The translations under genes and the position numbers were made by a program. The notes under the pieces are model-generated. The model worked only from the letters and a program-made list of their open reading frames with translations, ran no database searches and had not been told where the DNA came from. Positions 15,619-60,343 of a DNA stretch of 64,000 nucleotides are shown here, one piece after another. Within the stretch, counting starts at the first letter, position 1, and every line of letters starts with the position of its first letter. The stretch lies in assembly GCF_023055435.1 (NCBI RefSeq), contig NW_025963868.1:25234001-25298000 (forward strand). Reading direction: 5' to 3'. Source of the stretch: Haliotis rufescens (Eukaryota).

Positions 15619-15924
15619 GGTTTGTTTGTTGTTTTACGCCGCACTCAGCAATATTCCAGCTATATGACGGCGGTCTGTATGTAAATAATCGAGTCTCGAC
15701 TAGACAATCCAGTGATTGATATGATGAGCATCGATCCACGCACATGATTGTTTAACGCAGCTATATGACGGCGGTCTGTAAAAAAAATCGGGTCTGGACC
15801 AGACAATCCAGTGATTAGTATCATGAGCATCGATCCCGTTAGTCGCCTTTTACGACAAGAAGTCACCTTTTACGGCAAGCATGGGTTGCTGAAGACCTAT
15901 TCTACCTGGGAATCTTCACGGGTC
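15619..15924 (-). mobile_element. Family B retroposon with internal duplication
   Basis: Consensus match; TSD CTGTTAATAT. Confidence 0.85.
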
Positions 15925-16036
15925 CTGTTAATATTGCGTTTGTTTTGCTGCATTTGTTTTGTTCTGTTAATATGGCAAAACTAATGCAAACCACTGACCG
16001 GAGGCTGCAGCTGTCTTTTGACCAACTGCACGGCCT

Positions 16037-16660
16037 TGGTTTGTTGTTTTACGCCGCACTCAGCAATATTCCAGCTATATGACGGCGGTCTGTATGTAAA
16101 TAATCGAGTCTCGACTAGACAATCCAGTGATTGATATGATGAGCAACGATCCACGCACATGATTAACGCCGCACGCAGCTATATGACGGCGGTCTGTAAA
16201 AAAAATCGAGTCTGGACCAGACAATCCAGTGATTAATATCATGAGCATCGATCCACGCAATTGGGATGGATGACATGCATCAACCAAGTAGGCGAGTCTG
16301 ACCACCCGATCCCGTTAGTCGCCTTTCACGGCAAGCATGTGCTGCTGAAGACCTATTCTACCCCGGAATCTTCACGGGTCCCACGGAAATGGGATCGATG
16401 ATATTCATCAACCAAGTCAGCCAGCCTGACCACCCGATGCCGCCTTTTACGACCAGAATAGTCACCTTTTACGGCAAGCATGGGTTGCTGAAGATCCATT
16501 CTACCCCGGATTTTCACGGTCGGGGATACGATGACATGCATCAACTAAGTCAGTAAGCCCGATTACCCGATCCCGTTAGTCGCCTCTTACGACAAGCATA
16601 GTCACCTTTTACAGAAAGTGTGGATTGCTGAAGACCTATCCTACCCCGGATCTTCCTGGG
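16037..16660 (-). mobile_element. Cluster of tandem full and partial family B copies
   Basis: Three 5' heads end at ~16380, 16521 and 16660. Confidence 0.85.
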
Positions 16661-17076
16661 TTGCTAAGTTTTACTTGACCTGGGTTTCTGTGACAAAAGT
16701 AGCAGACTGCTACCAGGAATCCTTTGCCTTCATCCCTTGTTATGAATTCCGTAAATGCAACCCAAAATGATCATGGTTACCAAACCTACTTGAAGTCAGA
16801 CAATCATAATTTGACAATCAAGTCATTATGTTGATTTATTCATAAATAACAAATTATATTACCACCTAAAACTCTGAACATCACATGCAAAAAAGTTAAG
16901 AGAAACCACAAAGCAACACATTCCCAAATAAATAAGTATACATAACTCCTACTCGGGAACTTAAGGCTACACATTACTTTTCTCTAGTATAGTTATAAGA
17001 AGGGTGTACTTTAGTACTTGGCATCATTAATGTCATTGGTACTAGCATTTACAAATAATTTGATCAGACATTTGAT

Positions 17077-17350: not shown

Positions 17351-18276
17351 TCAGACATTTGAATCCAAATGTATTTATTCAAGAGCTGCACATTTACCTC
17401 TCCTCTGGATCAGTTAATACTTATTTCAAGTAGGTATCATGTTGAATATTGTCATGGTAGAATGGAGCTTAGGCGCTTGTTTCAAATTATATGAGACACC
17501 TAATCAACAGTGAGACTAGCCTAAAATTTCAAAACACAGCAGGTTTACTGACTGTTCGTCAAACTGTCAATATTTAGAAGAATTTCCTATCGGTGTTTGT
17601 AAAATCATGTAATGTCCCTTGGAAACCCCTGTTACATAACTTCTTGTCAAATGTCCCCGTGGGGACCCGGGGAAGATAAACAAGAATGTGTCCTCAGTCC
17701 CCCAATGCTGGTCGTAAAAGGCGACCTAATTGGGCAGCCTGTTTGCCGTGGGCTGCGACCCTGTGTCGGCAGAGGAAGGGATTCTTGTGGTTGAGGGCGA
17801 CGGAGCCGGCAAATAGTGCTCCTTAGTCCAACACACCACTTCGACCCTAACTTTGCCTAGACGGGCGGTAGAATGGGCCCGATTCTATCAATCGGCTGGT
17901 CACGTCATGCCCTGTGCATAAAATATTTCATGCACACTTTTGATGTTAAAAAAAATAATTTAACCTAAATGTATATCATATCTAACAATCTATAAAACTT
18001 GCTTAGAGCCCTATGCCCAGAAGGCGGTGGCTCATGGGCCAATCTGGTGATGCTGACCTCCGAATTCTGTACTTCTCCAATTGATTGTCATGGGCCGAAC
18101 CAGCCTGACCTTTAATTTGGTAGAATTCTATAGCTCTTCGTGTCAAATTTGCTGGAGTATACCACCCCTTTATCCCCAGTCTTTGCAGCTTGGAAATCCG
18201 CTGCAGCATAAGACTGTCCTTGTAGACATTCCATGGTGGGTGGGGAAAAGGGGTGCCGAATCATTTTCCTTTCGAC

Positions 18277-19524
18277 ATGGCTTCCCAACACCCTGGTTCA
18301 AAACGTAGATACATAGAATCTGACAATTCACCTGACGAAAATACCACCAACCGATCTGACTATTGGCCACGTTTTTTGATTATCGAAGCTTGTGACAAAG
18401 AACCAATAAAACTAAATCCGTTTGCAATCTCCAAAGGTATCGCTGGTGCCTGCGGAAAGGTTACAAATGTCACCAAGCTTCGATCCGGTTCTCTCCTTGT
18501 GGAATGTGCACAGAGACAGCAATCCATCAATCTTCTCGGTTTGAAAGAGTTTGTAAATATCAAGGTTGCTGTCTCTGAACACAGGACACTGAACTCATGC
18601 AAGGGAATTGTCCGTGACAGGGCTCGCTGCCTGTCCGGCATGACCGAGGATGAAATAGTCAAAGAACTTGTCCAGCAGTCTGTCACAGCTGTTAAACGAT
18701 TCACTGTCAAAAAGGATGGTTTGGTTGTAGATACCAACACCTATCTCTTCACTTTCGCCCGTTCGAAGATTCCACAATCGATCAAAGCCGGTTATTGTAA
18801 CATCGGAGTGGAGGTGTATATCCCCAATCCACTCCGGTGCTACACCTGCCAAGCGTTTGGACATGGATCCAAGTCCTGCCGTGCCTCTGCTGTCTGTTAC
18901 CGCTGCGGTGACAAGCATGAGGCCACTGACTGCAGGAAGGATGTGAAGTGTTCGAACTGTGGTGGGAGCCATATGGCATCTTCCAAATCCTGCCCTGTCT
19001 GGCAACATGAATTACAGATCATGAAAATCAAGACTGAGCAAAACCTCTCCTACTATGAAGCTAAGAAGAGGGTTGCAGGTTCTACTGCAACCACTTCTTC
19101 TATCTCTCGTCCTCCTGTCACCACTGCCTCTATCGACTGCCAGACTGATCTGACATGGGTCAAGTCTGTGCAGCCACTTCCTACTGCTTCACTCGTTAAA
19201 CCAGCTGTGACACCTACGTCTGTGACTCCTAAAAAAAAAACTGTAAAAAATGTTGAGTCTCAGACTCCTAAAGCAACATCAGAATCAGAACCAGAACCAG
19301 TTAAACTGTCAAACAGGGAAAAGAAATTATTGAAAAAGAAGCAGCTGAGAGAACAGCTGCAAACACCAAAGGCCACCTCTCCTTTAGAGGTCCCAGTAGA
19401 GGTCCATAACTCCTTTGGTCCTCTGGACATGGAGGTAACTCCATCTCCTCATGATACCAATAGGAGTACCACAAAGTCTTCCTCACGTTCGCGTGACATT
19501 TCTCCCGTGGAAGCACCACCATGA
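18277..19524 (+). CDS. LINE ORF1, gag-like nucleic-acid-binding protein
   Basis: PRFLII..NPFAI..KLRSGSLLVE; YIPNPLRC; three CCHC knuckles (CYTCQAFGHGSKSC, CYRCGDKHEATDC, CSNCGGSHMASSKSC); first ATG at 18277. Confidence 0.92.
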   Translation: MASQHPGSKRRYIESDNSPDENTTNRSDYWPRFLIIEACDKEPIKLNPFAISKGIAGACGKVTNVTKLRSGSLLVECAQRQQSINLLGLKEFVNIKVAVSEHRTLNSCKGIVRDRARCLSGMTEDEIVKELVQQSVTAVKRFTVKKDGLVVDTNTYLFTFARSKIPQSIKAGYCNIGVEVYIPNPLRCYTCQAFGHGSKSCRASAVCYRCGDKHEATDCRKDVKCSNCGGSHMASSKSCPVWQHELQIMKIKTEQNLSYYEAKKRVAGSTATTSSISRPPVTTASIDCQTDLTWVKSVQPLPTASLVKPAVTPTSVTPKKKTVKNVESQTPKATSESEPEPVKLSNREKKLLKKKQLREQLQTPKATSPLEVPVEVHNSFGPLDMEVTPSPHDTNRSTTKSSSRSRDISPVEAPP

Positions 19525-22500
19525 ATCCACAAAATATAATACAATGGAATTGCAGAGGTCTTAAGAAGAATTTTAATGAAATACAACTTTTAATTCAAGA
19601 TTTTAAACCGTCAGCTTTTTGTCTCCAAGAAACATATCTAAAAAACACAGATCTATTTGATATCCGTCAGTACAGTTCTTACCACTCGTTTTCCCCTCCT
19701 GGTGATAAAGCTACAGGAGGTGCCTCTATCCTGGTGAAGCAGGGCACTATCCATGGCCCTGTTCCACTCAATACTACGCTACAAGCCGTTGCTGACCGTG
19801 TTACTTTAAACATAGTGTTTACATTATGTTCATTGTATCTTCCACCTTCCTCAACTATCCGTCAATCAGATCTTCAGACTTTGTACGATCAGCTCCCGAA
19901 GCCCTGTATCATCATGGGCGATTTAAACGGTCATAATCCCCTATGGGGGAGTACTGACATAAATAAAAAGGGAAAAGTCCTTGAAGATTTTATCTCAAAC
20001 AATGATTTATGTATCTTCAATGATGGTAATACCACATATCTTCATCCCGCCACTGGCACATACTCTGCCCTTGACCTTTCACTGACAGATTCAAATATTT
20101 TAAATGAATTCGAATGGTCTGTCCATGATGACCTTTGTGGAAGTGACCATTTTCCAACAATACTTAAAACTATAAATCCGTCTGACGAACCACCTTCAAC
20201 AAGGTGGAACTTTACAAAGGCCGATTGGTCTTTATTCCAAACACTTTGTTCTGAAAAACTAAAACCTGAAAGTTTCAGGAATGTTCCTGATCCTATACAA
20301 CTTTTTTCAGATAAATTAAATGATATTGGAGACGAAAGCATTCCTAAGTCCTCTGCAAACCCCCATATACGTAAACCATGGTTCGATAACACTTGTAAAC
20401 AAGCTAGGAAAAATAGGAAGAAAGCTGAAAAATATTTCCGACGACATCCTACCGTCCACAATTTGAATAACGTTAAAATCACGGGCGCTAAAGCGAGACG
20501 TACCTTTAAACAGAATAAACGTCAATCATGGAGGAACTATGTTTCAAAAATTAATTCCCGCACACCTATGTCCAAGGTGTGGAACATGATTCAAAAGATT
20601 AAGGGGAAAGGGTCAAAATCTGGAGTTCACCATCTCAAAGATGGTAATACACTTTTAACAACTAAATCTGAAATAGGCAACAAACTTGGTGACACTTTGG
20701 CAAATCATTCCTCATCATCAAACTATAATCCTCAATTCCAGAGGTTTCAAAAACAGCAGGAAAAGAAAACAGTAAATTTTAACTCTGATAATGGTGAGGA
20801 CTATAACGAAACATTTTCACTCAATGAATTATATACTGCCCTAGGACAATCTCATGACACTGCAGCAGGAGCAGACAACATCCACTATCAGCTCCTGAAA
20901 CACTTGCCCGATTCATGTTTGGAAACTTTACTTAATATATTTGATGAAATATGGACAACCGGAAATTTCCCTCCTTCGTGGCACAATGCTATTATAATTC
21001 CTATTCCAAAGCCTGGACGGGATCACACAGATCCATCCAACTACCGTCCAATATCATTAACTAGCTGTGTTTGCAAAACCATGGAGCGAATGGTCAACAA
21101 TCGATTAGTCTGGTACCTGGAGACCAATAACCTCCTGAGTGACATCCAGTGTGGTTTCCGAAAAAACAGAAGTACCATTGACCATTTGGTGCGTTTAGAA
21201 TCGTTTATTAAAAATTCCATTGTCAACAAACAACATACTGTATCAATCTTTTTCGATCTAGAGAAAGCATTTGATACAACGTGGAAACATGGTGTTTTAA
21301 AAGATTTGCATGAATTTGGATTGAGGGGCAGATTACCTCAGTTCATATCTAAATTTTTAAACAACAGACAATTTCACGTACGAGTGGGCTCTACCCTGTC
21401 TGATCAATTTGATCAAGACCAGGGCGTCCCTCAAGGCAGCATACTGTCAGTCACCCTTTTCAGCATCAAAATTAATAGTCTCACTAAAGTATTAAACAAT
21501 AGCGTTGATGGTTCACTTTTTGTGGATGATTTCAATATTTCTTGTCGTGGTAAGAATATGAATACAATAGAAAGACAGCTACAGCTCTGTCTTAACAAAA
21601 TTCAAAAATGGGCCAACGAAAACGGCTTCAAATTTTCTAAATCCAAAACAAACTGTATTCACTTTTGTCGTAAATACAAACCTCACAAGGATCCAGATTT
21701 ATTTTTAGATGGTACTCCTGTCAAGGTAGTAGAGGAGGCCAAATTCCTGGGCCTCATATTTGACCGTCATCTCACATTCTTACCACACATTAAATATCTC
21801 AAGGCAAAGTGCCTGAAGGCTCTCGACTTGTTAAAAGTCGTTTCAAATTCCGAGTGGGGAGGGGATCAGACCACCCTCCTTCACTTGTACAGATCGTTAA
21901 TACGCTCCAAACTGGACTATGGTTCCATTGTCTATGGTGGAGCCTGCAAAAGCAATTTAGAAAAATTGGACACTGTACACCATCAAGGCCTAAGACTCTG
22001 TCTTGGAGCTTTTAGGACCTCTCCTGTGGACAGTTTGTATGTGGAGGCCGATGAACCTTCACTCGAACTGCGCCGCATTAAACTTTCACTGCAATATATC
22101 ACTAAATTGCACTCAAATAAATCTAATCCAGCATACAATTGTGTGTTCCACCCTCAATATGAAAACCTGTTTCAAAATCTCTCAAACCTGGTTCCACCAC
22201 TTGGAATCAGAATTCAAACACACATCACTACAGCTAAATTGGATTTAAATATTATTTCACCTCACCGTCTTCTCCTCCCTGGCAGATGGTGAAGCCAGAA
22301 GTAGACCTCACTCTAACCAATCTAAAAAAGTCGGATACCAATCCTTTGGTATATCAACAATCATATAACCAATTACGCTCCAAATATAATTCTCACAGGT
22401 CCATTTTTACAGACGGGTCCAAGGATGGTGGCAAAGTTGCAAGTGCCACCGTCATTGGATCCAGAACTGTCTCCTCAAGAATATCTTTACAGCTTTGACC

Positions 22501-23166
22501 TATATCAAACATCAAAACCAATCCAAAAATTTCATCATTTTCTCCGATTCATTATCATGCCTTCAGGCACTTAAAAGTATCTCCTCAAATCATCCTATAA
22601 TCCTTGACATTTTAGAACTCTATAATGATCTTTCTACTGGCCAATGTGACATCGTCTTTTGCTGGTTACCAAGTCATGTAGGCATAACAGGTAACTCAAA
22701 AGCCGATACTGCAGCTAAAGCAGCTCTTGAAAAACCGTTGTCTCCACTCTTTATCCCGTACAGTGATTTCAAACCAACCATCAAATCTTATACTCGGGAT
22801 CTCATGCAAAAGAGGTGGGACACCCAAGTAGGAAGCAATAAACTACACGAATTGAAACCAACAATCGGTCATAACTACTTGGGTTGTCAGTCAAGACATG
22901 ACGAGATCGTTTTACGACGGTGTCGTATTGGCCACAGTCGGTTTACACACGAATATCTGCTGAAGACAGATGAGGACGAACCTCCTAAGTGTATCCCTTG
23001 CGATGAAAGGTTCACCGTCAAGCATATATTGCTTGACTGTGTGGACTTTGCAATCGCAAGGGATTCACATTATCAAAGTGTAAATCTAAAAGATCTCTTT
23101 TCCCGTGTCAACGGGCATCTCATCATAAATTACTTGAAAGAAATTGGTCTTTATAATAAATTTTAA
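19521..23166 (+). pseudogene. LINE ORF2 (APE endonuclease, RT, RNase H, CCHC), broken by a frameshift near 22280 and a deletion in RNase H near 22480
   Basis: IIQWNCRG, GDLNGH, SDHFP; YRPISLTS, DLEKAFD, GVPQGS, FVDD; IFTDGSK, SDSLS, WLPSHVGITGN..AD; CIPC..H..C; the conserved FxAELxAI segment is missing. Confidence 0.9.
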
Positions 23167-23805
23167 ATATGTATGTGAATAATTAAATGCTTGTTTTTAA
23201 ATTTGGTGTAATGCTATTAGCAACTGACATTATTAAAGGCTCTGTCCATTAATTGTCATCAATTGTTTTTAAATATGACATTGTATAAATAACTAAATTG
23301 TGTATATATTAGCTTGGTCTCGTCGCTCTATGGCTGAAATAATGCCGATGCGACGTTAAATTTTAACTCACTCACTCTTGTCAAATGATGTCTTAGAAAA
23401 AGTTACCATTATCCATGGCATTCAACATCTTGCCCATTACTGACACCTCCCGTATTCCAATTGGGCACTGATAGTTCTCCTTGTTGTTATGGGCTTCATA
23501 TGGCCCATGCGGTCCAGGAAGGCTTTCTGGTCTGTGGGGCTCATGTCCAGGCTTGCATAATATGTCGAAACTCGGTGGCGATTACGGGTGGCATTCCCCC
23601 ACACTCATGCTTGTATAAATACATCTCTCACTGACTGCCGGCCAGAGCAATGGCTAGAAGAACCTTTTGTTGCAAAAAGGAAGACGTTGGTGTCTCGGAT
23701 CCCATTTTCTTGTCTTCCTTTAAGCAGTATTTGTGTAGCAGGGATAATGTCCTCTGGTATAAGTACTGGTACCAGTTTTCTACCCTTGCCTTATAAAAAA
23801 AGGAT

Positions 23806-35484: not shown

Positions 35485-36011
35485 CGTGTTAAAATATCCG
35501 AAACCCCGCTACGATTCTAACAAGCGGAAGAGGGACAAAATGGCAATGTTTGTCCCTCGTTTTTCGCGCATGCGCGAACCCAAAATAGAGCGGAAGTATC
35601 TAAAATTCTATTTTTAGTAGTTTGGCCTTGTTGATGAAATGGCTTATTGGAACTAAACATTTTGGGGATACTGGATCTGCTGTATTGGTATCACATGTTT
35701 TCCTATGGCGATAAAAAGTTATATTTAAAAGAAACCGTTTACACCTGCTACACATTTTCAATGAGTCTTCATGTTTCGGTTTTCTTTCCCTCATCATCAG
35801 GATTTCTTCTTTTTGATTTTTGAATTGTTCTAAATTGTATTCAACCATTCCCTCTCTCCGTTTCTGATAAAAAAAATGGGTGCGTTCTTTTTTACTTTTG
35901 GTCAAAATAAGCTTCACTTCATCATTCATATGGTGCTGTCTAATGATGTGTCTATTTAGTTTTCCCCCGCTTACAATCTTCTTGCCCCGCTTACAATCTT
36001 CTTGCAGTATG

Positions 36012-36280
36012 GGACCCGTGAAGATTCCGGGGTAGAATAGGTCTTCAGCAACCCATGCTTGCCGTAAAAGGCGACTATGCTTGTCGTAAAAGGCGACTAA
36101 CGGGATCGGGTGGTCAGGCTCGCTGACTTGGTTGATAAATGTCGTCGATCCCAATTGCGTGGATCGATGCTCATAATATTAATCACTGGATTGTCTGGTC
36201 TAGACTCGATGTTTTACAGACCGCCGTCATATAGCTGGAATATTGCTGAGTGCGGCGTTAAACAACAAACCAACCAACCA
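36012..36280 (+). mobile_element. Family B retroposon inserted in a Crypton coding exon
   Basis: 12-bp TSD TCTTGCAGTATG. Confidence 0.9.
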
Positions 36281-36608
36281 AAATCTTGCAGTATGTGCAG
36301 AATCTGTCAGGTTTCTGAGAAAGAAAATCTCATATACATTGTACTGTAAAAAAACAACAACAATATGTTATTGTACATTGTATCCATGTGGGTAATCAAC
36401 CCCGACGTTTGGTGTAACGAGCAGACGTTTTAACCACTAGGCTACCCCACTGACCCCAGTAACATACTAACGACACACCCAAAATAAAACTCATCACAAG
36501 TAATTTCATGAGTGAATGACCTTCAAAATGACTGTTTTTTTACACAAACTAGACATGTCTAGTGTTTACTCACATTTTTACTCTTGCGGCCTTGACCATA
36601 TGCGAAGG

Positions 36609-36850
36609 GACCCATGAAGATTCCGGGGTAGAATAGGTCTTCAGCAACCCATTCTTGTCGTAAAAGGCGACTAACGGGATCCGGTGGTCAGGCTCGCTGA
36701 CTTGGTTGATGCAAGTCATCGATCCCAATTTGGTGGATCGATGCTTATGACATTAATCACTAGTTTGTGTGGTCCTGACTCGATTATTTACAGACCGCCG
36801 TCACATAGCTGGAATATTGCTGAGTGCAGCGTTAAACAACAAACCAACCA
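36609..36850 (+). mobile_element. Family B retroposon, single-hairpin variant
   Basis: 14-bp TSD ACCATATGCGAAGG. Confidence 0.9.
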
Positions 36851-37917
36851 ACCATATGCGAAGGACACCCAAAAGAATGTGTTAAAGAGATCAAATACTA
36901 GCGATCATCTATATAATCTCTAACATCTGTTAGAAAACAAAATGTGGCCTTAAAGCTCAACCTAAAGAAAACATATTAAGTAAGCACAATACCTTGGAGG
37001 ATGAACGGAACATTTTTGCTCCTTACATGAGCAATGTTTTACATAATTGCCAAGAACTAAGATGCCATCGTTCATGGTTGGCATCTGTCCTCACTTTGAT
37101 AACCACATGATACACTGTAAGCAGACCTGACTTGGTTACTTAAGAAACACTTGTCTCAATGATAAATTACATTGTACTGGATCTGCGTCATGTGATTCAT
37201 TTTATTGTTTCCAAAATAACCTCAATTATTTCCAGATACAAATGGGACACATTTCTGCATTGATTTGCAGCAGTTTATAAAATAGGAAACACTGCATTAT
37301 ATCATATCTATCATCTCTATCTTGCTGCTTTGTCCCTCTTACAAAGAAACTCTGCAACCTATAACATTGCATATCAAATTTCAAAGGAATATTTTTATCA
37401 AACTATGTTGGAACTGTATAAGCATACCATTTATATCATATTTATGCAAGTAAGGTTCCAAAAGAATTCATTTTCCCACTTCATTTAACTGAAGTCCATA
37501 AAGAAAGCCAATAAAAAATGATAATAGTTTCAGTGCCAAATATCACAAAATACTTTCACACACTTCTATTAACACTAACTTTAATAGGTTTTTCCACATA
37601 TGACTTTGTGACACAATACAAGAAACCATTTCAACTTTTACTTGGAACTTGCTTCAATGCCTGAGATAAACTTTCATTACATACTTTCTTTGAAGTCGTC
37701 TTTGAGCATCCTCCAGCATCACTGGCATACTCCTGAATCATCAAATTTTTAATACATGCACACCGTAAGCATGGCAAGAGGGATACTATTGGGCATCTGC
37801 ACACAAGAGATGACTGCAGGGATGATGTGCAGACTTGCATACATACTGTGGTTTGGGACACACAGGCTAGACTGTCGGTCAGGGTTTTTCCTTAATCCAA
37901 AGTATAGCTGGAGGGTT

Positions 37918-59935: not shown

Positions 59936-60178
59936 TATGACCCCAACGGGCATCGTTTTTATCCGTTGGCTTTATCCTGCCGAGAAACCTACCCATTATA
60001 TGATAAACCACCAGTCAGTATGGAAGTGGAAGTTGAACACTAAACGCCAGGTAAGAGTTCACAATAAGACCAATAGAACCGGCAGACGGACTTCTGTTTT
60101 CAATTTAGGAATTGTCCGGTCAAATACCTACCACTACGGCGGATATGAGTTGGATACAGATTCCTTACTGTAACACTA

Positions 60179-60343
60179 GTGAGTGAGTGAGTATGATTTT
60201 ACGCCGCTTTTAGCAATATTCCAGCAATATCACGACGGGGGACACCAGACATGGGCTTCACACATTGTACCCATGTCGGGAATCGAACCCGGGTCTTCGG
60301 CGTGACGAGCGAACGCTTTAACCACTAGGCTACCCGACCGCCC
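60179..60343 (-). mobile_element. SINE family A
   Basis: 13-bp TSD TACTGTAACACTA. Confidence 0.93.

What the first reader, a model, noticed from the sequence alone, without database searches (positions are those of the whole stretch)
17654..17740. Conserved, covarying structured RNA motif at the exact 5' end of both the Nimb-like LINE and the family B retroposon
Seen: the LINE begins CCCCG-TGGGGAC-C-CGGGG-AAGATAAACAAGAATGT-GTCCTCA-GTCC-CCCAA-TGCT-GGTCGT(AAAAG)GCGACC-TAA-TTGGG. Family B (e.g. 36012) begins CCCG-TGAAGAT-TC-CGGGG-TAGAATAG-GTCTTCA-GCAA-CCC-ATGCTT-GTCGT(AAAAG)GCGAC-TAA-CGGG. The stems differ in sequence but keep pairing (TGGGGAC/GTCCTCA versus TGAAGAT/GTCTTCA; CCCAA/TTGGG versus CCC/GGG). 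The 5'-terminal CCCG can pair with the loop CGGG, giving an H-type pseudoknot, and the hairpin followed by C-TAA is invariant. Established: several non-LTR clades (R2, RTE, L1Tc/Ingi) use 5' HDV-like ribozymes. Inference: this fold ends like an HDV J4/2 strand (CUAA before the closing stem) but has no HDV P3/P1.1, so it may be a different 5'-processing ribozyme, an IRES-like element or an internal promoter.
Basis: partly seen in the sequence, partly recalled or inferred. Interest (0 to 1): 0.85.

Follow-up and report, generated by a model that had tools for sequence, protein, structure and literature searches.

The report
Structured RNA head of abalone LINE
The 87-base motif is a real folded RNA domain that opens one abalone jumping gene (LINE) and its very abundant short partner, but it is not the self-cutting RNA: in about 1,200 sister LINE copies a tiny HDV-like ribozyme sits just in front of it, and this window's lineage has lost that ribozyme.

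Summary
Window 17654-17741 is the exact 5' end of a 5.7-kb APE/RT/RNase H LINE flanked by target-site duplications. Family B, a ~270-bp partner, carries the same module 2-4 nt from its own 5' end. One helix, H1 (7 bp), is paired in all 25 sequences compared and has double compensatory changes at three pairs. The other proposed pairings are invariant or poorly kept.

The interpretation needs revision. In 33 of 34 divergent sister LINE families of this genome (Haliotis rufescens by ORF1 hits), the motif is internal. A conserved 57-58-nt leader precedes it. That leader has every sequence feature of a P4-less HDV-like ribozyme, and target-site duplications place its G1 at the element start.

The motif fails every HDV-like test and matches no Rfam family. 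The window's LINE clade begins exactly where the ribozyme would end and propagates without it. B keeps only the ribozyme's first ~14 nt.

Most likely the motif is a non-catalytic 5' "head": a start-site or promoter element plus a structured 5' end. A new ribozyme is not excluded (about 0.15).

Other notes of this scan had already reported the ribozyme and a "second module" behind it on other DNA of this genome.

The parts
17654..17741 (+). The motif: first 88 nt of the leaderless LINE (domain 2 of the clade's conserved 5' UTR)
   Evidence: Covariance model R1 scores it 116 bits. Homology of more than 25 genome copies starts at 17654.
17660..17696 (+). Helix H1: 5' strand 17660-17666, 3' strand 17690-17696, A-rich loop that contains CCGGGG
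   Evidence: 100% paired in 25 sequences. Pairs 3, 4 and 7 change on both sides. G.U pairs fit only the + strand RNA (further G-C state).
17654..17673 (+). Possible pseudoknot H2: 5'-terminal UCCCCG (17654-17659) with CGGGGA (17668-17673) in the H1 loop
   Evidence: Complementary and chosen by the nested MFE fold, but nearly invariant, so not tested by covariation.
17701..17734 (+). Bipartite hairpin: H3 (17701-17705 with 17730-17734), internal loop UGCU / C-NAA, H4 stem-loop (17710-17726)
   Evidence: H4 is 92% paired but has no double changes. H3 is 75% paired and its fifth pair is AU/UA/UG or unpaired.
17654..17914 (+). Conserved 5' UTR block, of which the motif is the first third
   Evidence: Across 33 sister families the first ~320 nt (leader + motif + ~180 nt) have column identity 0.88-1.0, against 0.4-0.6 at the ORF1 start.
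17654..23377 (+). The LINE: ORF1 18277-19524 (CCHC knuckle), ORF2 19521-22292 (APE + RT), RNase H-like piece 22495-23166, 3' stem-loop and (ACTC)n tail
   Evidence: Target-site duplication ttgtcaaatg at 17644-17653 and 23378-23387.
36012..36283 (+). Family B copy. Its head (36012-36104) has the 22-nt duplicated hairpin unit, its 3' module is LINE-like, and its tail is (CAAC/CCAA)n
   Evidence: Target-site duplication tcttgcagtatg at 36000-36011 and 36284-36295.
36609..36853 (+). Family B copy with a single-hairpin head (36609-36680)
   Evidence: Target-site duplication atatgcgaagg at 36598-36608 and 36854-36864.
60175..60341 (-). tRNA-headed SINE with the same LINE-type 3' stem-loop and (ACTC)n tail but no motif. 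It serves as a comparison element
   Evidence: Rfam tRNA 30.1 bits. Sequence and target-site duplication tagtgttacagta.

Best explanation
The motif is a genuine structured RNA domain, but it is not the clade's ribozyme.

Shown: In the ancestral and majority layout of this abalone I/Nimb-like LINE clade, the 5' UTR opens with a 58-nt P4-less HDV-like ribozyme with these features.
- P1 is 1-7 with 31-37, including a G1.U37 wobble.
- P2 is 10-16 with 52-58.
- P3 is ACC/GGU, and L3 is UCCUCGU.
- A GG dinucleotide is available for P1.1, and J4/2 reads C-UAA.
The motif follows this ribozyme with no spacer. The window's LINE clade (88-, 84- and 79-nt head forms, H1 5' strand UGGGGAC) starts at nt 57-58 of that layout and has no ribozyme. 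Family B joins the ribozyme's first ~14 nt to the motif, deleting the catalytic core, and its H1 3' strand has been re-matched to the new 5' strand.

Inferred: In these ribozyme-less elements the motif acts as a non-catalytic 'head', equivalent to the tRNA head of an ordinary SINE. At the DNA level it would carry the start-site-proximal element: a CYCGTGNNGA box lies 2-4 nt inside all three kinds of 5' end. At the RNA level it would fold into H1 (perhaps pseudoknotted with the terminal CCCCG) plus the H3/H4 hairpin, burying and marking the 5' end of the transcript.
For: The motif is real and selected as RNA:
- H1 is 100% paired, three pairs show double changes, and none of 500 shuffles reaches the observed covariation score.
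- Pair 3 takes four states: G.U, G-C, U-A and A-U.
- B's H1 3' strand differs at 4 positions from the leader-type LINE and restores pairing with its new 5' strand.

A ribozyme sits upstream in sister families:
- 33 of 34 families carry the leader plus the motif.
- Rfam RF02682 aligns over its whole model at 22.6-28.5 bits.
- My descriptor finds the full P1/P2/P3/L3/P1.1/J4/2 set only in the leader.
- Target-site duplications abut G1.
- The ribozyme core occurs 1,243 times in the genome.

The window clade lacks the ribozyme and has no ribozyme-bearing masters:
- The leader is absent from the window.
- No exact match was returned that joins the leader to UGGGGAC; the listing begins at one mismatch, and its one nearest case reads UGGGGAG.
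- Copies range from 84 to 100% identity, all with the same first base.

The motif plays the role of a head:
- A tRNA-headed SINE carries the same LINE-type 3' module and tail but no motif. The motif is therefore not needed for trans-mobilisation and occupies the position of a promoter-bearing head.
- The first base lies 0-1 nt before the H2 strand in the LINE but 2-4 nt before it in B. That fits variable start sites better than a structure-fixed cleavage site.
Against: - No promoter assay or RNA 5'-end data exist. The RNA runs offered were unitig contigs of uncertain type and small-RNA libraries with almost no reads.
- The 5' end of the leaderless LINE is precise to the nucleotide in more than 25 copies, which is more typical of processing than of Pol II initiation.
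- A DNA promoter does not explain why an RNA helix is maintained, so two functions have to be assumed.
- The CYCGTGNNGA box is a by-eye observation. Its second copy lies inside the ribozyme core and may be coincidental.
- The whole first ~320 nt is conserved, not just the motif, so part of the conservation could reflect 5' UTR exchange between families.
Confidence: 0.5

Rival explanations
1. The motif is itself a self-cleaving ribozyme, either of a new class or a rearranged descendant of an HDV-like ribozyme. It would cut at its own 5' edge, which would let the leaderless LINE clade and B dispense with the upstream HDV-like ribozyme.
For: - The 5' end is nucleotide-precise in more than 25 leaderless copies, with no ribozyme-bearing masters.
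- Pairing can start at the first base (H2), as in HDV P1.
- The motif's 3' half reads UGCU-GG-hairpin-C-NAA-helix strand. That order is collinear with the leader ribozyme's P1 3' strand, P1.1, P4, J4/2 and P2.
- Every known LINE/partner pair that shares a 5' module shares a ribozyme (PMC3383444, PMC3414825).
Against: - No Rfam ribozyme family matches, even at E<=10.
- The HDV-like descriptor gives no solution for the 88-, 84- or 79-nt leaderless heads and only chance-level ones for B; 8-9% of shuffles do as well.
- The strand order is wrong for HDV: the partner of the strand that follows C-NAA lies immediately before the hairpin.
- The putative catalytic C is base-paired in the LINE.
- The first base sits at different distances from the fold in the LINE and in B.
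- In 1,200+ leader-type copies the element starts at the ribozyme's G1, not at the motif.
Confidence: 0.15
2. The motif is mainly a binding platform for the LINE's own proteins, comparable to the 5' protein-binding RNA of R2. The machinery would recognise or complete the 5' end through it, and B copies it to be mobilised more efficiently.
For: - The structure is selected at the RNA level in both the coding LINE and non-coding B.
- It is conserved far above ORF1 across families.
- B also copies the LINE 3' recognition module.
- The R2 precedent is from my own knowledge and was not checked here.
Against: - A tRNA-headed SINE with the same 3' module and tail spreads without the motif.
- B keeps only the first ~75 nt of a ~320-nt conserved block.
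- No protein-RNA data exist.
Confidence: 0.2
3. The motif is a helper domain of the upstream P4-less ribozyme, stacking on P2 and aiding folding or translation of the uncapped product. In the leaderless LINE and B it would be a carried-over relic.
For: - The motif abuts P2's last base with no spacer in 33 families.
- P4-less ribozymes lack the usual stabilising domain (PMC10879173).
- Peripheral domains activate large HDV-like ribozymes (PMC4908430, abstract).
Against: - H1 has been actively re-matched in exactly the lineages that lack the ribozyme: B and the 88-, 84- and 79c-nt forms.
- About 9,700 near-perfect B heads exist.
- B is non-coding, so a translation role cannot hold for it.
Confidence: 0.1

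Closest known systems
Pr77 / L1TcRz of Trypanosoma cruzi L1Tc and its partner NARTc (PMC3383444, PMC3185411, PMC4035085)
   Same: In both systems a LINE of the RNase H-bearing I/ingi group and its non-autonomous partner share the first ~77-90 nt, and an HDV-like ribozyme is present at the LINE 5' end. The Pr77 'dual system' idea (promoter plus RNA element in one short head) is also proposed here.
   Different: In L1Tc the shared 77 nt are the ribozyme. Here the shared part is the domain behind the ribozyme. B and the window's LINE clade lack the catalytic core. Promoter activity is untested.
R2 5' HDV-like ribozyme and R2 SIDEs (PMC3414825, PMC3774820)
   Same: Non-autonomous derivatives arise by internal deletion and keep LINE 5' and 3' ends. 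The ribozyme defines the exact 5' junction.
   Different: SIDEs keep a working ribozyme. B's deletion removes P3, L3, the P1 3' strand and J4/2. The elements here are not site-specific.
Minimal (P4-less) HDV-like ribozymes: drz-Mtgn and phage theta ribozymes (PMC10879173); Rfam RF02682
   Same: This comparison concerns the 58-nt leader of the sister families, not the motif. The leader has the same nested double-pseudoknot layout, almost no P4, an L3 of the UCCUCGU type and a GCUAA J4/2. RF02682 aligns end to end.
   Different: The leader sits in an animal retrotransposon and scores below Rfam's gathering threshold (28.5 against 44 bits). It is absent from the window. The motif itself does not belong to this family.
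Twister T-variants at the 5' end of Schistosoma Perere-3 (PMC8501958)
   Same: A small RNA motif heads a non-LTR element. Twister also has a stem / internal loop (GC ... RUAAA) / stem arrangement that loosely resembles UGCU-hairpin-NAA.
   Different: Twister's invariant L4 (GUCCCAAGC) and its two pseudoknots are absent. There is no Rfam hit. A twister cleavage site would fall inside the motif, not at its 5' edge.

Membership tests
HDV-like ribozyme (applied to the motif, 17654-17741, and to the B head) | P1 helix starting at +1, with its 3' strand directly following a P3 hairpin | tested here: not met
   The descriptor search gives 0 solutions for the 88-, 84- and 79c-nt heads. B gives a 6-bp P1-like pairing plus P3 but no credible P2 or P1.1, which is at the level of shuffled sequence.
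HDV-like ribozyme (applied to the motif, 17654-17741, and to the B head) | P2 whose 5' strand lies between P1 and P3 and whose 3' strand follows J4/2 (C-NAA) | tested here: not met
   The strand after C-NAA (17730-17734) pairs with 17701-17705, immediately before the hairpin, so the pairing is nested and not pseudoknotted.
HDV-like ribozyme (applied to the motif, 17654-17741, and to the B head) | Match to curated covariance models (RF00094, RF02682, RF00622, the drz families) | tested here: not met
   There is no hit at E<=10 on 17600-17800 or 36590-36720. The same search finds the leader of sister families.
HDV-like ribozyme (applied to the 58-nt leader of sister LINE families, outside the window) | P1 (7 bp, G1.U37), P2 (7 bp), P3 (3 bp), 7-nt L3, P1.1 GG, a J4/2 C, and a cleavage site at the element's first base | tested here: met
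   Self-cleavage itself was not tested.
Twister, hammerhead, hatchet, pistol, hairpin and twister-sister ribozymes | Match to the family covariance model and its conserved core nucleotides | tested here: not met
   Rfam 15 gives no hit at gathering threshold or at E<=10. Twister's L4 is absent by eye (for the consensus).
tRNA-, 7SL- or 5S-derived SINE head (for family B) | Head homologous to a Pol III gene with A and B boxes | tested here: not met
   ARAGORN finds none in the window. Rfam finds a tRNA only at 60268-60339, in a different SINE. B's head aligns to the LINE 5' UTR.
LINE/partner shared 5' head (Pr77 type) | The same first ~80 nt at the 5' end of an autonomous LINE and of a short non-autonomous element that also shares the LINE 3' end | tested here: met
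LINE/partner shared 5' head (Pr77 type) | Internal promoter activity of the head | not testable with these tools
   This needs reporter assays. The RNA runs on offer gave no 5'-end information.

The most novel reading that the evidence does not exclude
The motif is a new kind of 5'-end-defining RNA: a self-cleaving fold descended from a duplicated HDV-like ribozyme but with a different topology. It would have taken over from the upstream ribozyme in one LINE clade and would head the genome's most abundant retroposon.
Probability: 0.15. Interest if true: 0.85.

Novelty: new variant of a known kind. Interest (0 to 1): 0.55.

Why it matters
LINE/SINE partnerships are normally explained by a shared 3' end. 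The few cases with a shared 5' end (L1Tc/NARTc, R2/SIDE) share a ribozyme. Here one genome holds a natural comparison:
- about 1,200 LINE copies headed by a P4-less HDV-like ribozyme followed by the motif;
- a long-lived LINE clade that has lost the ribozyme and begins with the motif;
- a retroposon with about 9,700 near-perfect heads that keeps the motif but has deleted the ribozyme core.

This makes it directly testable whether a 5' ribozyme is dispensable for a LINE, and what short sequence can replace it (promoter, protective fold or new catalyst). It also shows that a reading made from one window can mistake the second domain of a bipartite leader for the processing element.

Tried and rejected
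- **Other Rfam ribozyme families** (twister, hammerhead, hatchet, pistol): searched at gathering threshold and at E<=10 on the window, the LINE head and a B head. Only noise came back: a lncRNA fragment and a flavivirus xrRNA on the wrong strand.
- **Threading the motif onto the HDV fold by eye, in several registers**: rejected because of strand order, and confirmed by a descriptor search with shuffled controls.
- **An HDV-like topology for B** (P1 GGG/CCC, P2 CCCG/CGGG, P3 = H1): the helices are too short, and the LINE does not share them.
- **A B-specific P2 (GAUUCCG/CGGGAUC)**: not conserved in the LINE.
- **Covariation for H2 from B subfamilies**: one copy has CCAG/CUGG, but two other CCAG copies are uncompensated.
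- **MFE z-scores** are unremarkable, -0.5 to -1.6.
- **RNA evidence**: the runs offered were contigs of uncertain type and small-RNA libraries. There was no usable 5'-end signal.
- **RT stalling at the ribozyme as the sole source of leaderless copies**: rejected because no ribozyme-bearing master with the clade's H1 exists.
- **L098**, the one family without the motif, is a truncated or interrupted copy and is uninformative.
- **PMC3308841** (Ruminski 2011) is not held in the library.

Full report
**1. What is at the coordinates**

It is the first 88 nt of a 5.7-kb LINE on the + strand, 17654-23377.
- ORF1 (18277-19524) has a CCHC knuckle.
- ORF2 (19521-22292) has an APE endonuclease and a reverse transcriptase.
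- A weak RNase H match lies in 22495-23166.
- The element ends in a stem-loop and an (ACTC)n tail.
- It is flanked by the 10-bp duplication ttgtcaaatg at 17644-17653 and 23378-23387.

A whole-genome DNA search found more than 25 copies, at 84-100% identity, whose homology starts at exactly 17654 with unrelated upstream DNA. The 5' end is therefore real and precise. ORF1 homologues name the genome as Haliotis rufescens.

**2. Family B**

B is a ~270-bp retroposon. Two copies in the window are 36012-36283 and 36609-36853, both with target-site duplications.
- Its 3' end resembles the LINE 3' stem-loop.
- Its 5' ~75 nt resemble the motif.
- The hairpin core occurs 30 times in the window against 0.05 expected.
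- A 34-nt B head pattern occurs 9,743 times in the genome with at most one mismatch.
- Most young copies carry a 22-nt tandem duplication of the hairpin unit.
- With target-site duplications resolved, B begins GA or GGGA before CCCG. The duplications often end in GG, which suggests microhomology at a GGGA end.

**3. Which pairings are supported**

I compared 25 sequences that represent the distinct head forms: the 88-, 84-, 79a- and 79b-nt LINE heads and B.
- **H1** is paired in 100% of cells. Three of its seven pairs changed on both sides: pair 3 is UA/GU/AU, pair 4 is GC/AU, and pair 7 is CG/AU/UG. None of 500 shuffles reached the covariation score, and slid controls fell to 34-59% pairing. 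A further leaderless form adds G-C at pair 3. The G.U pairs make sense only on the + strand, so this is selection on the sense RNA.
- **H4** is well paired but shows no double change.
- **H3**'s fifth pair is AU, UA or UG in 9 sequences and unpaired in 11. Its other departures come mostly from B, where the 3' strand CGGG pairs better with the 5'-terminal CCCG than with CCCAU.
- **H2**, the terminal pseudoknot, hardly varies.

The 'CCCAA/TTGGG versus CCC/GGG' claim and the 'invariant C-TAA' claim do not.

**4. The finding that changes the reading**

I fetched 1.6 kb upstream of ORF1 for 34 divergent LINE families of the same genome. Their ORF1 proteins are about 41-55% identical to the window's. 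Model R1 found the motif in 33 of them, about 620-650 nt upstream of ORF1.

In all 33 the motif is not terminal. A conserved 57-58-nt leader precedes it, and the flanks diverge just 5' of GGCACUC. The leader folds as a compact HDV-like ribozyme:
- P1 is 1-7 with 31-37, including a G1.U37 wobble.
- P2 is 10-16 with 52-58.
- P3 is ACC/GGU, and L3 is UCCUCGU.
- GG at 38-39 is available for P1.1.
- P4 is almost absent.
- J4/2 reads C-UAA.

Three results support this fold. Rfam's RF02682 aligns over its whole length at 22.6-28.5 bits, which is below the gathering score. Nested folding alternates between P1 and P2+P3, as expected for a double pseudoknot. A descriptor I wrote recovers the complete set of helices in the leader only. 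Two full elements have target-site duplications that abut G1, and the ribozyme core occurs 1,243 times in the genome. Self-cleavage itself was not tested.

I reached this. Afterwards I found that other notes of this scan report the same ribozyme, and 'a second module stacked directly behind' it, on other pieces of the genome.

**5. Where the window's elements stand in that layout**

The window has no leader. Its LINE begins at nt 57-58 of the leader-type layout, which is the last base of P2.

The leaderless state is a clade character. The 88-, 84- and 79c-nt heads all have the H1 5' strand UGGGGAC, and this leaderless head occurs 118 times at up to one mismatch. A pattern joining the leader to that strand returned no exact match; the listing begins at one mismatch, and its one nearest case reads UGGGGAG. 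These elements therefore propagate without the ribozyme. The 84-100% identity range, with one constant first base, shows they have done so for a long time.

B's first ~14 nt resemble the leader's first 14 nt (P1 and P2 5' strands), and then B runs straight into the motif. The catalytic core has been deleted. B's H1 3' strand differs at four positions from the leader-type LINE and restores pairing with the new 5' strand.

**6. What the motif is not**

It matches no Rfam family at E<=10. It fails the HDV-like descriptor, where B's few solutions are at the level of shuffled sequence. Its C-NAA is followed by a strand that pairs immediately upstream of the hairpin, so the HDV strand order is not met.

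Its 3' half (UGCU-GG-hairpin-C-NAA-strand) is collinear with the leader's P1 3' strand, P1.1, P4, J4/2 and P2. This hints at an old duplication of the ribozyme. I hold that only as a weak inference.

**7. What it most likely does**

- The motif is not uniquely conserved. The whole first ~320 nt of the 5' UTR is 0.88-1.0 identical across families whose ORF1 start is 0.4-0.6 identical.
- B keeps only the first quarter of that block, so the function B needs lies there.
- B is non-coding, so that function is not translation.
- A tRNA-headed SINE in the window (60175-60341, minus strand) has the same LINE-type 3' module and (ACTC)n tail but no motif. The LINE machinery can therefore mobilise RNAs without the motif, and in B the motif occupies the place of a promoter-bearing head.
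- All three kinds of 5' end carry a CYCGTGNNGA box 2-4 nt from the first base, seen by eye.
- The first base lies at different distances from the fold in the LINE and in B. That fits start-site choice better than a structure-fixed cleavage site.

I therefore read the motif as a non-catalytic head: a start-site or promoter element whose transcript folds into H1 (possibly pseudoknotted to the very 5' end) plus the H3/H4 hairpin, giving a buried, marked 5' end. Confidence is about 0.5.

The nucleotide-precise LINE 5' end and the maintained RNA helix keep a ribozyme reading alive at about 0.15. A protein-platform reading stands at about 0.2 and a ribozyme-helper relic at about 0.1.

**8. Limits**

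- The RNA runs gave no 5'-end information.
- Copies of a transposon share descent, so cell counts overstate the number of independent events. The H1 argument rests on lineage-level states, each seen in several copies with different flanks.

Noticed in passing
window 15640-16700 (- strand): This is a composite family B element. It has three tandem 5' units (motif plus ~55 nt each, joined at ...GCGTG|GGACCCG) and repeated 3' units. Several genome copies show the same head-to-body junction. It looks like template switching at the RNA 5' end, or monomer amplification as in mouse L1 promoters.
   Followed up: partly
window 60175-60341 (- strand): This is a tRNA-derived SINE (~165 bp, Rfam tRNA 30.1 bits) with target-site duplication tagtgttacagta. 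Its 3' stem-loop and (ACTC)n tail match the LINE 3' end, so it is a second, conventional partner of the same LINE clade.
   Followed up: partly
L117, L118 (G000:C568:1011900-1013000) and L119 (G000:C334:64069900-64070200): These are tandem satellite-like arrays with ~52-nt and ~75-nt units. Each unit begins with the motif's 5' half (CCCCGTGGGGACCCGGGGTAGA...).
   Followed up: no
L081-L114, leader positions 43 and 51: The ribozyme leader comes in two linked variants: A43 with C51, and G43 with A51. These do not form a standard pair. In the G43 form an alternative hairpin (32-37 with 42-47) could sequester the P1 3' strand and the J4/2 C.
   Followed up: no
window 17414-17653: One 324-nt contig of run X1 matches the flank up to 17653 and then continues for 84 nt unlike the LINE (record 1). 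This may be an empty-site allele, meaning the insertion is polymorphic, or only a unitig branch at a repeat.
   Followed up: no
window 19521-23166: In this copy ORF2 stops at 22292, and the RNase H-like part lies in a separate ORF (22495-23166). The copy may be broken there. It was not compared with other copies.
   Followed up: no
window 17890-17990 and L081-L114: After the ~320-nt conserved 5' block comes an AT-rich, length-variable stretch. A second almost invariant 20-nt island (TGGCTCATGGGCCAATCTGG, identity 0.98) follows, about 250 nt before ORF1 (window about 18020-18045).
   Followed up: no
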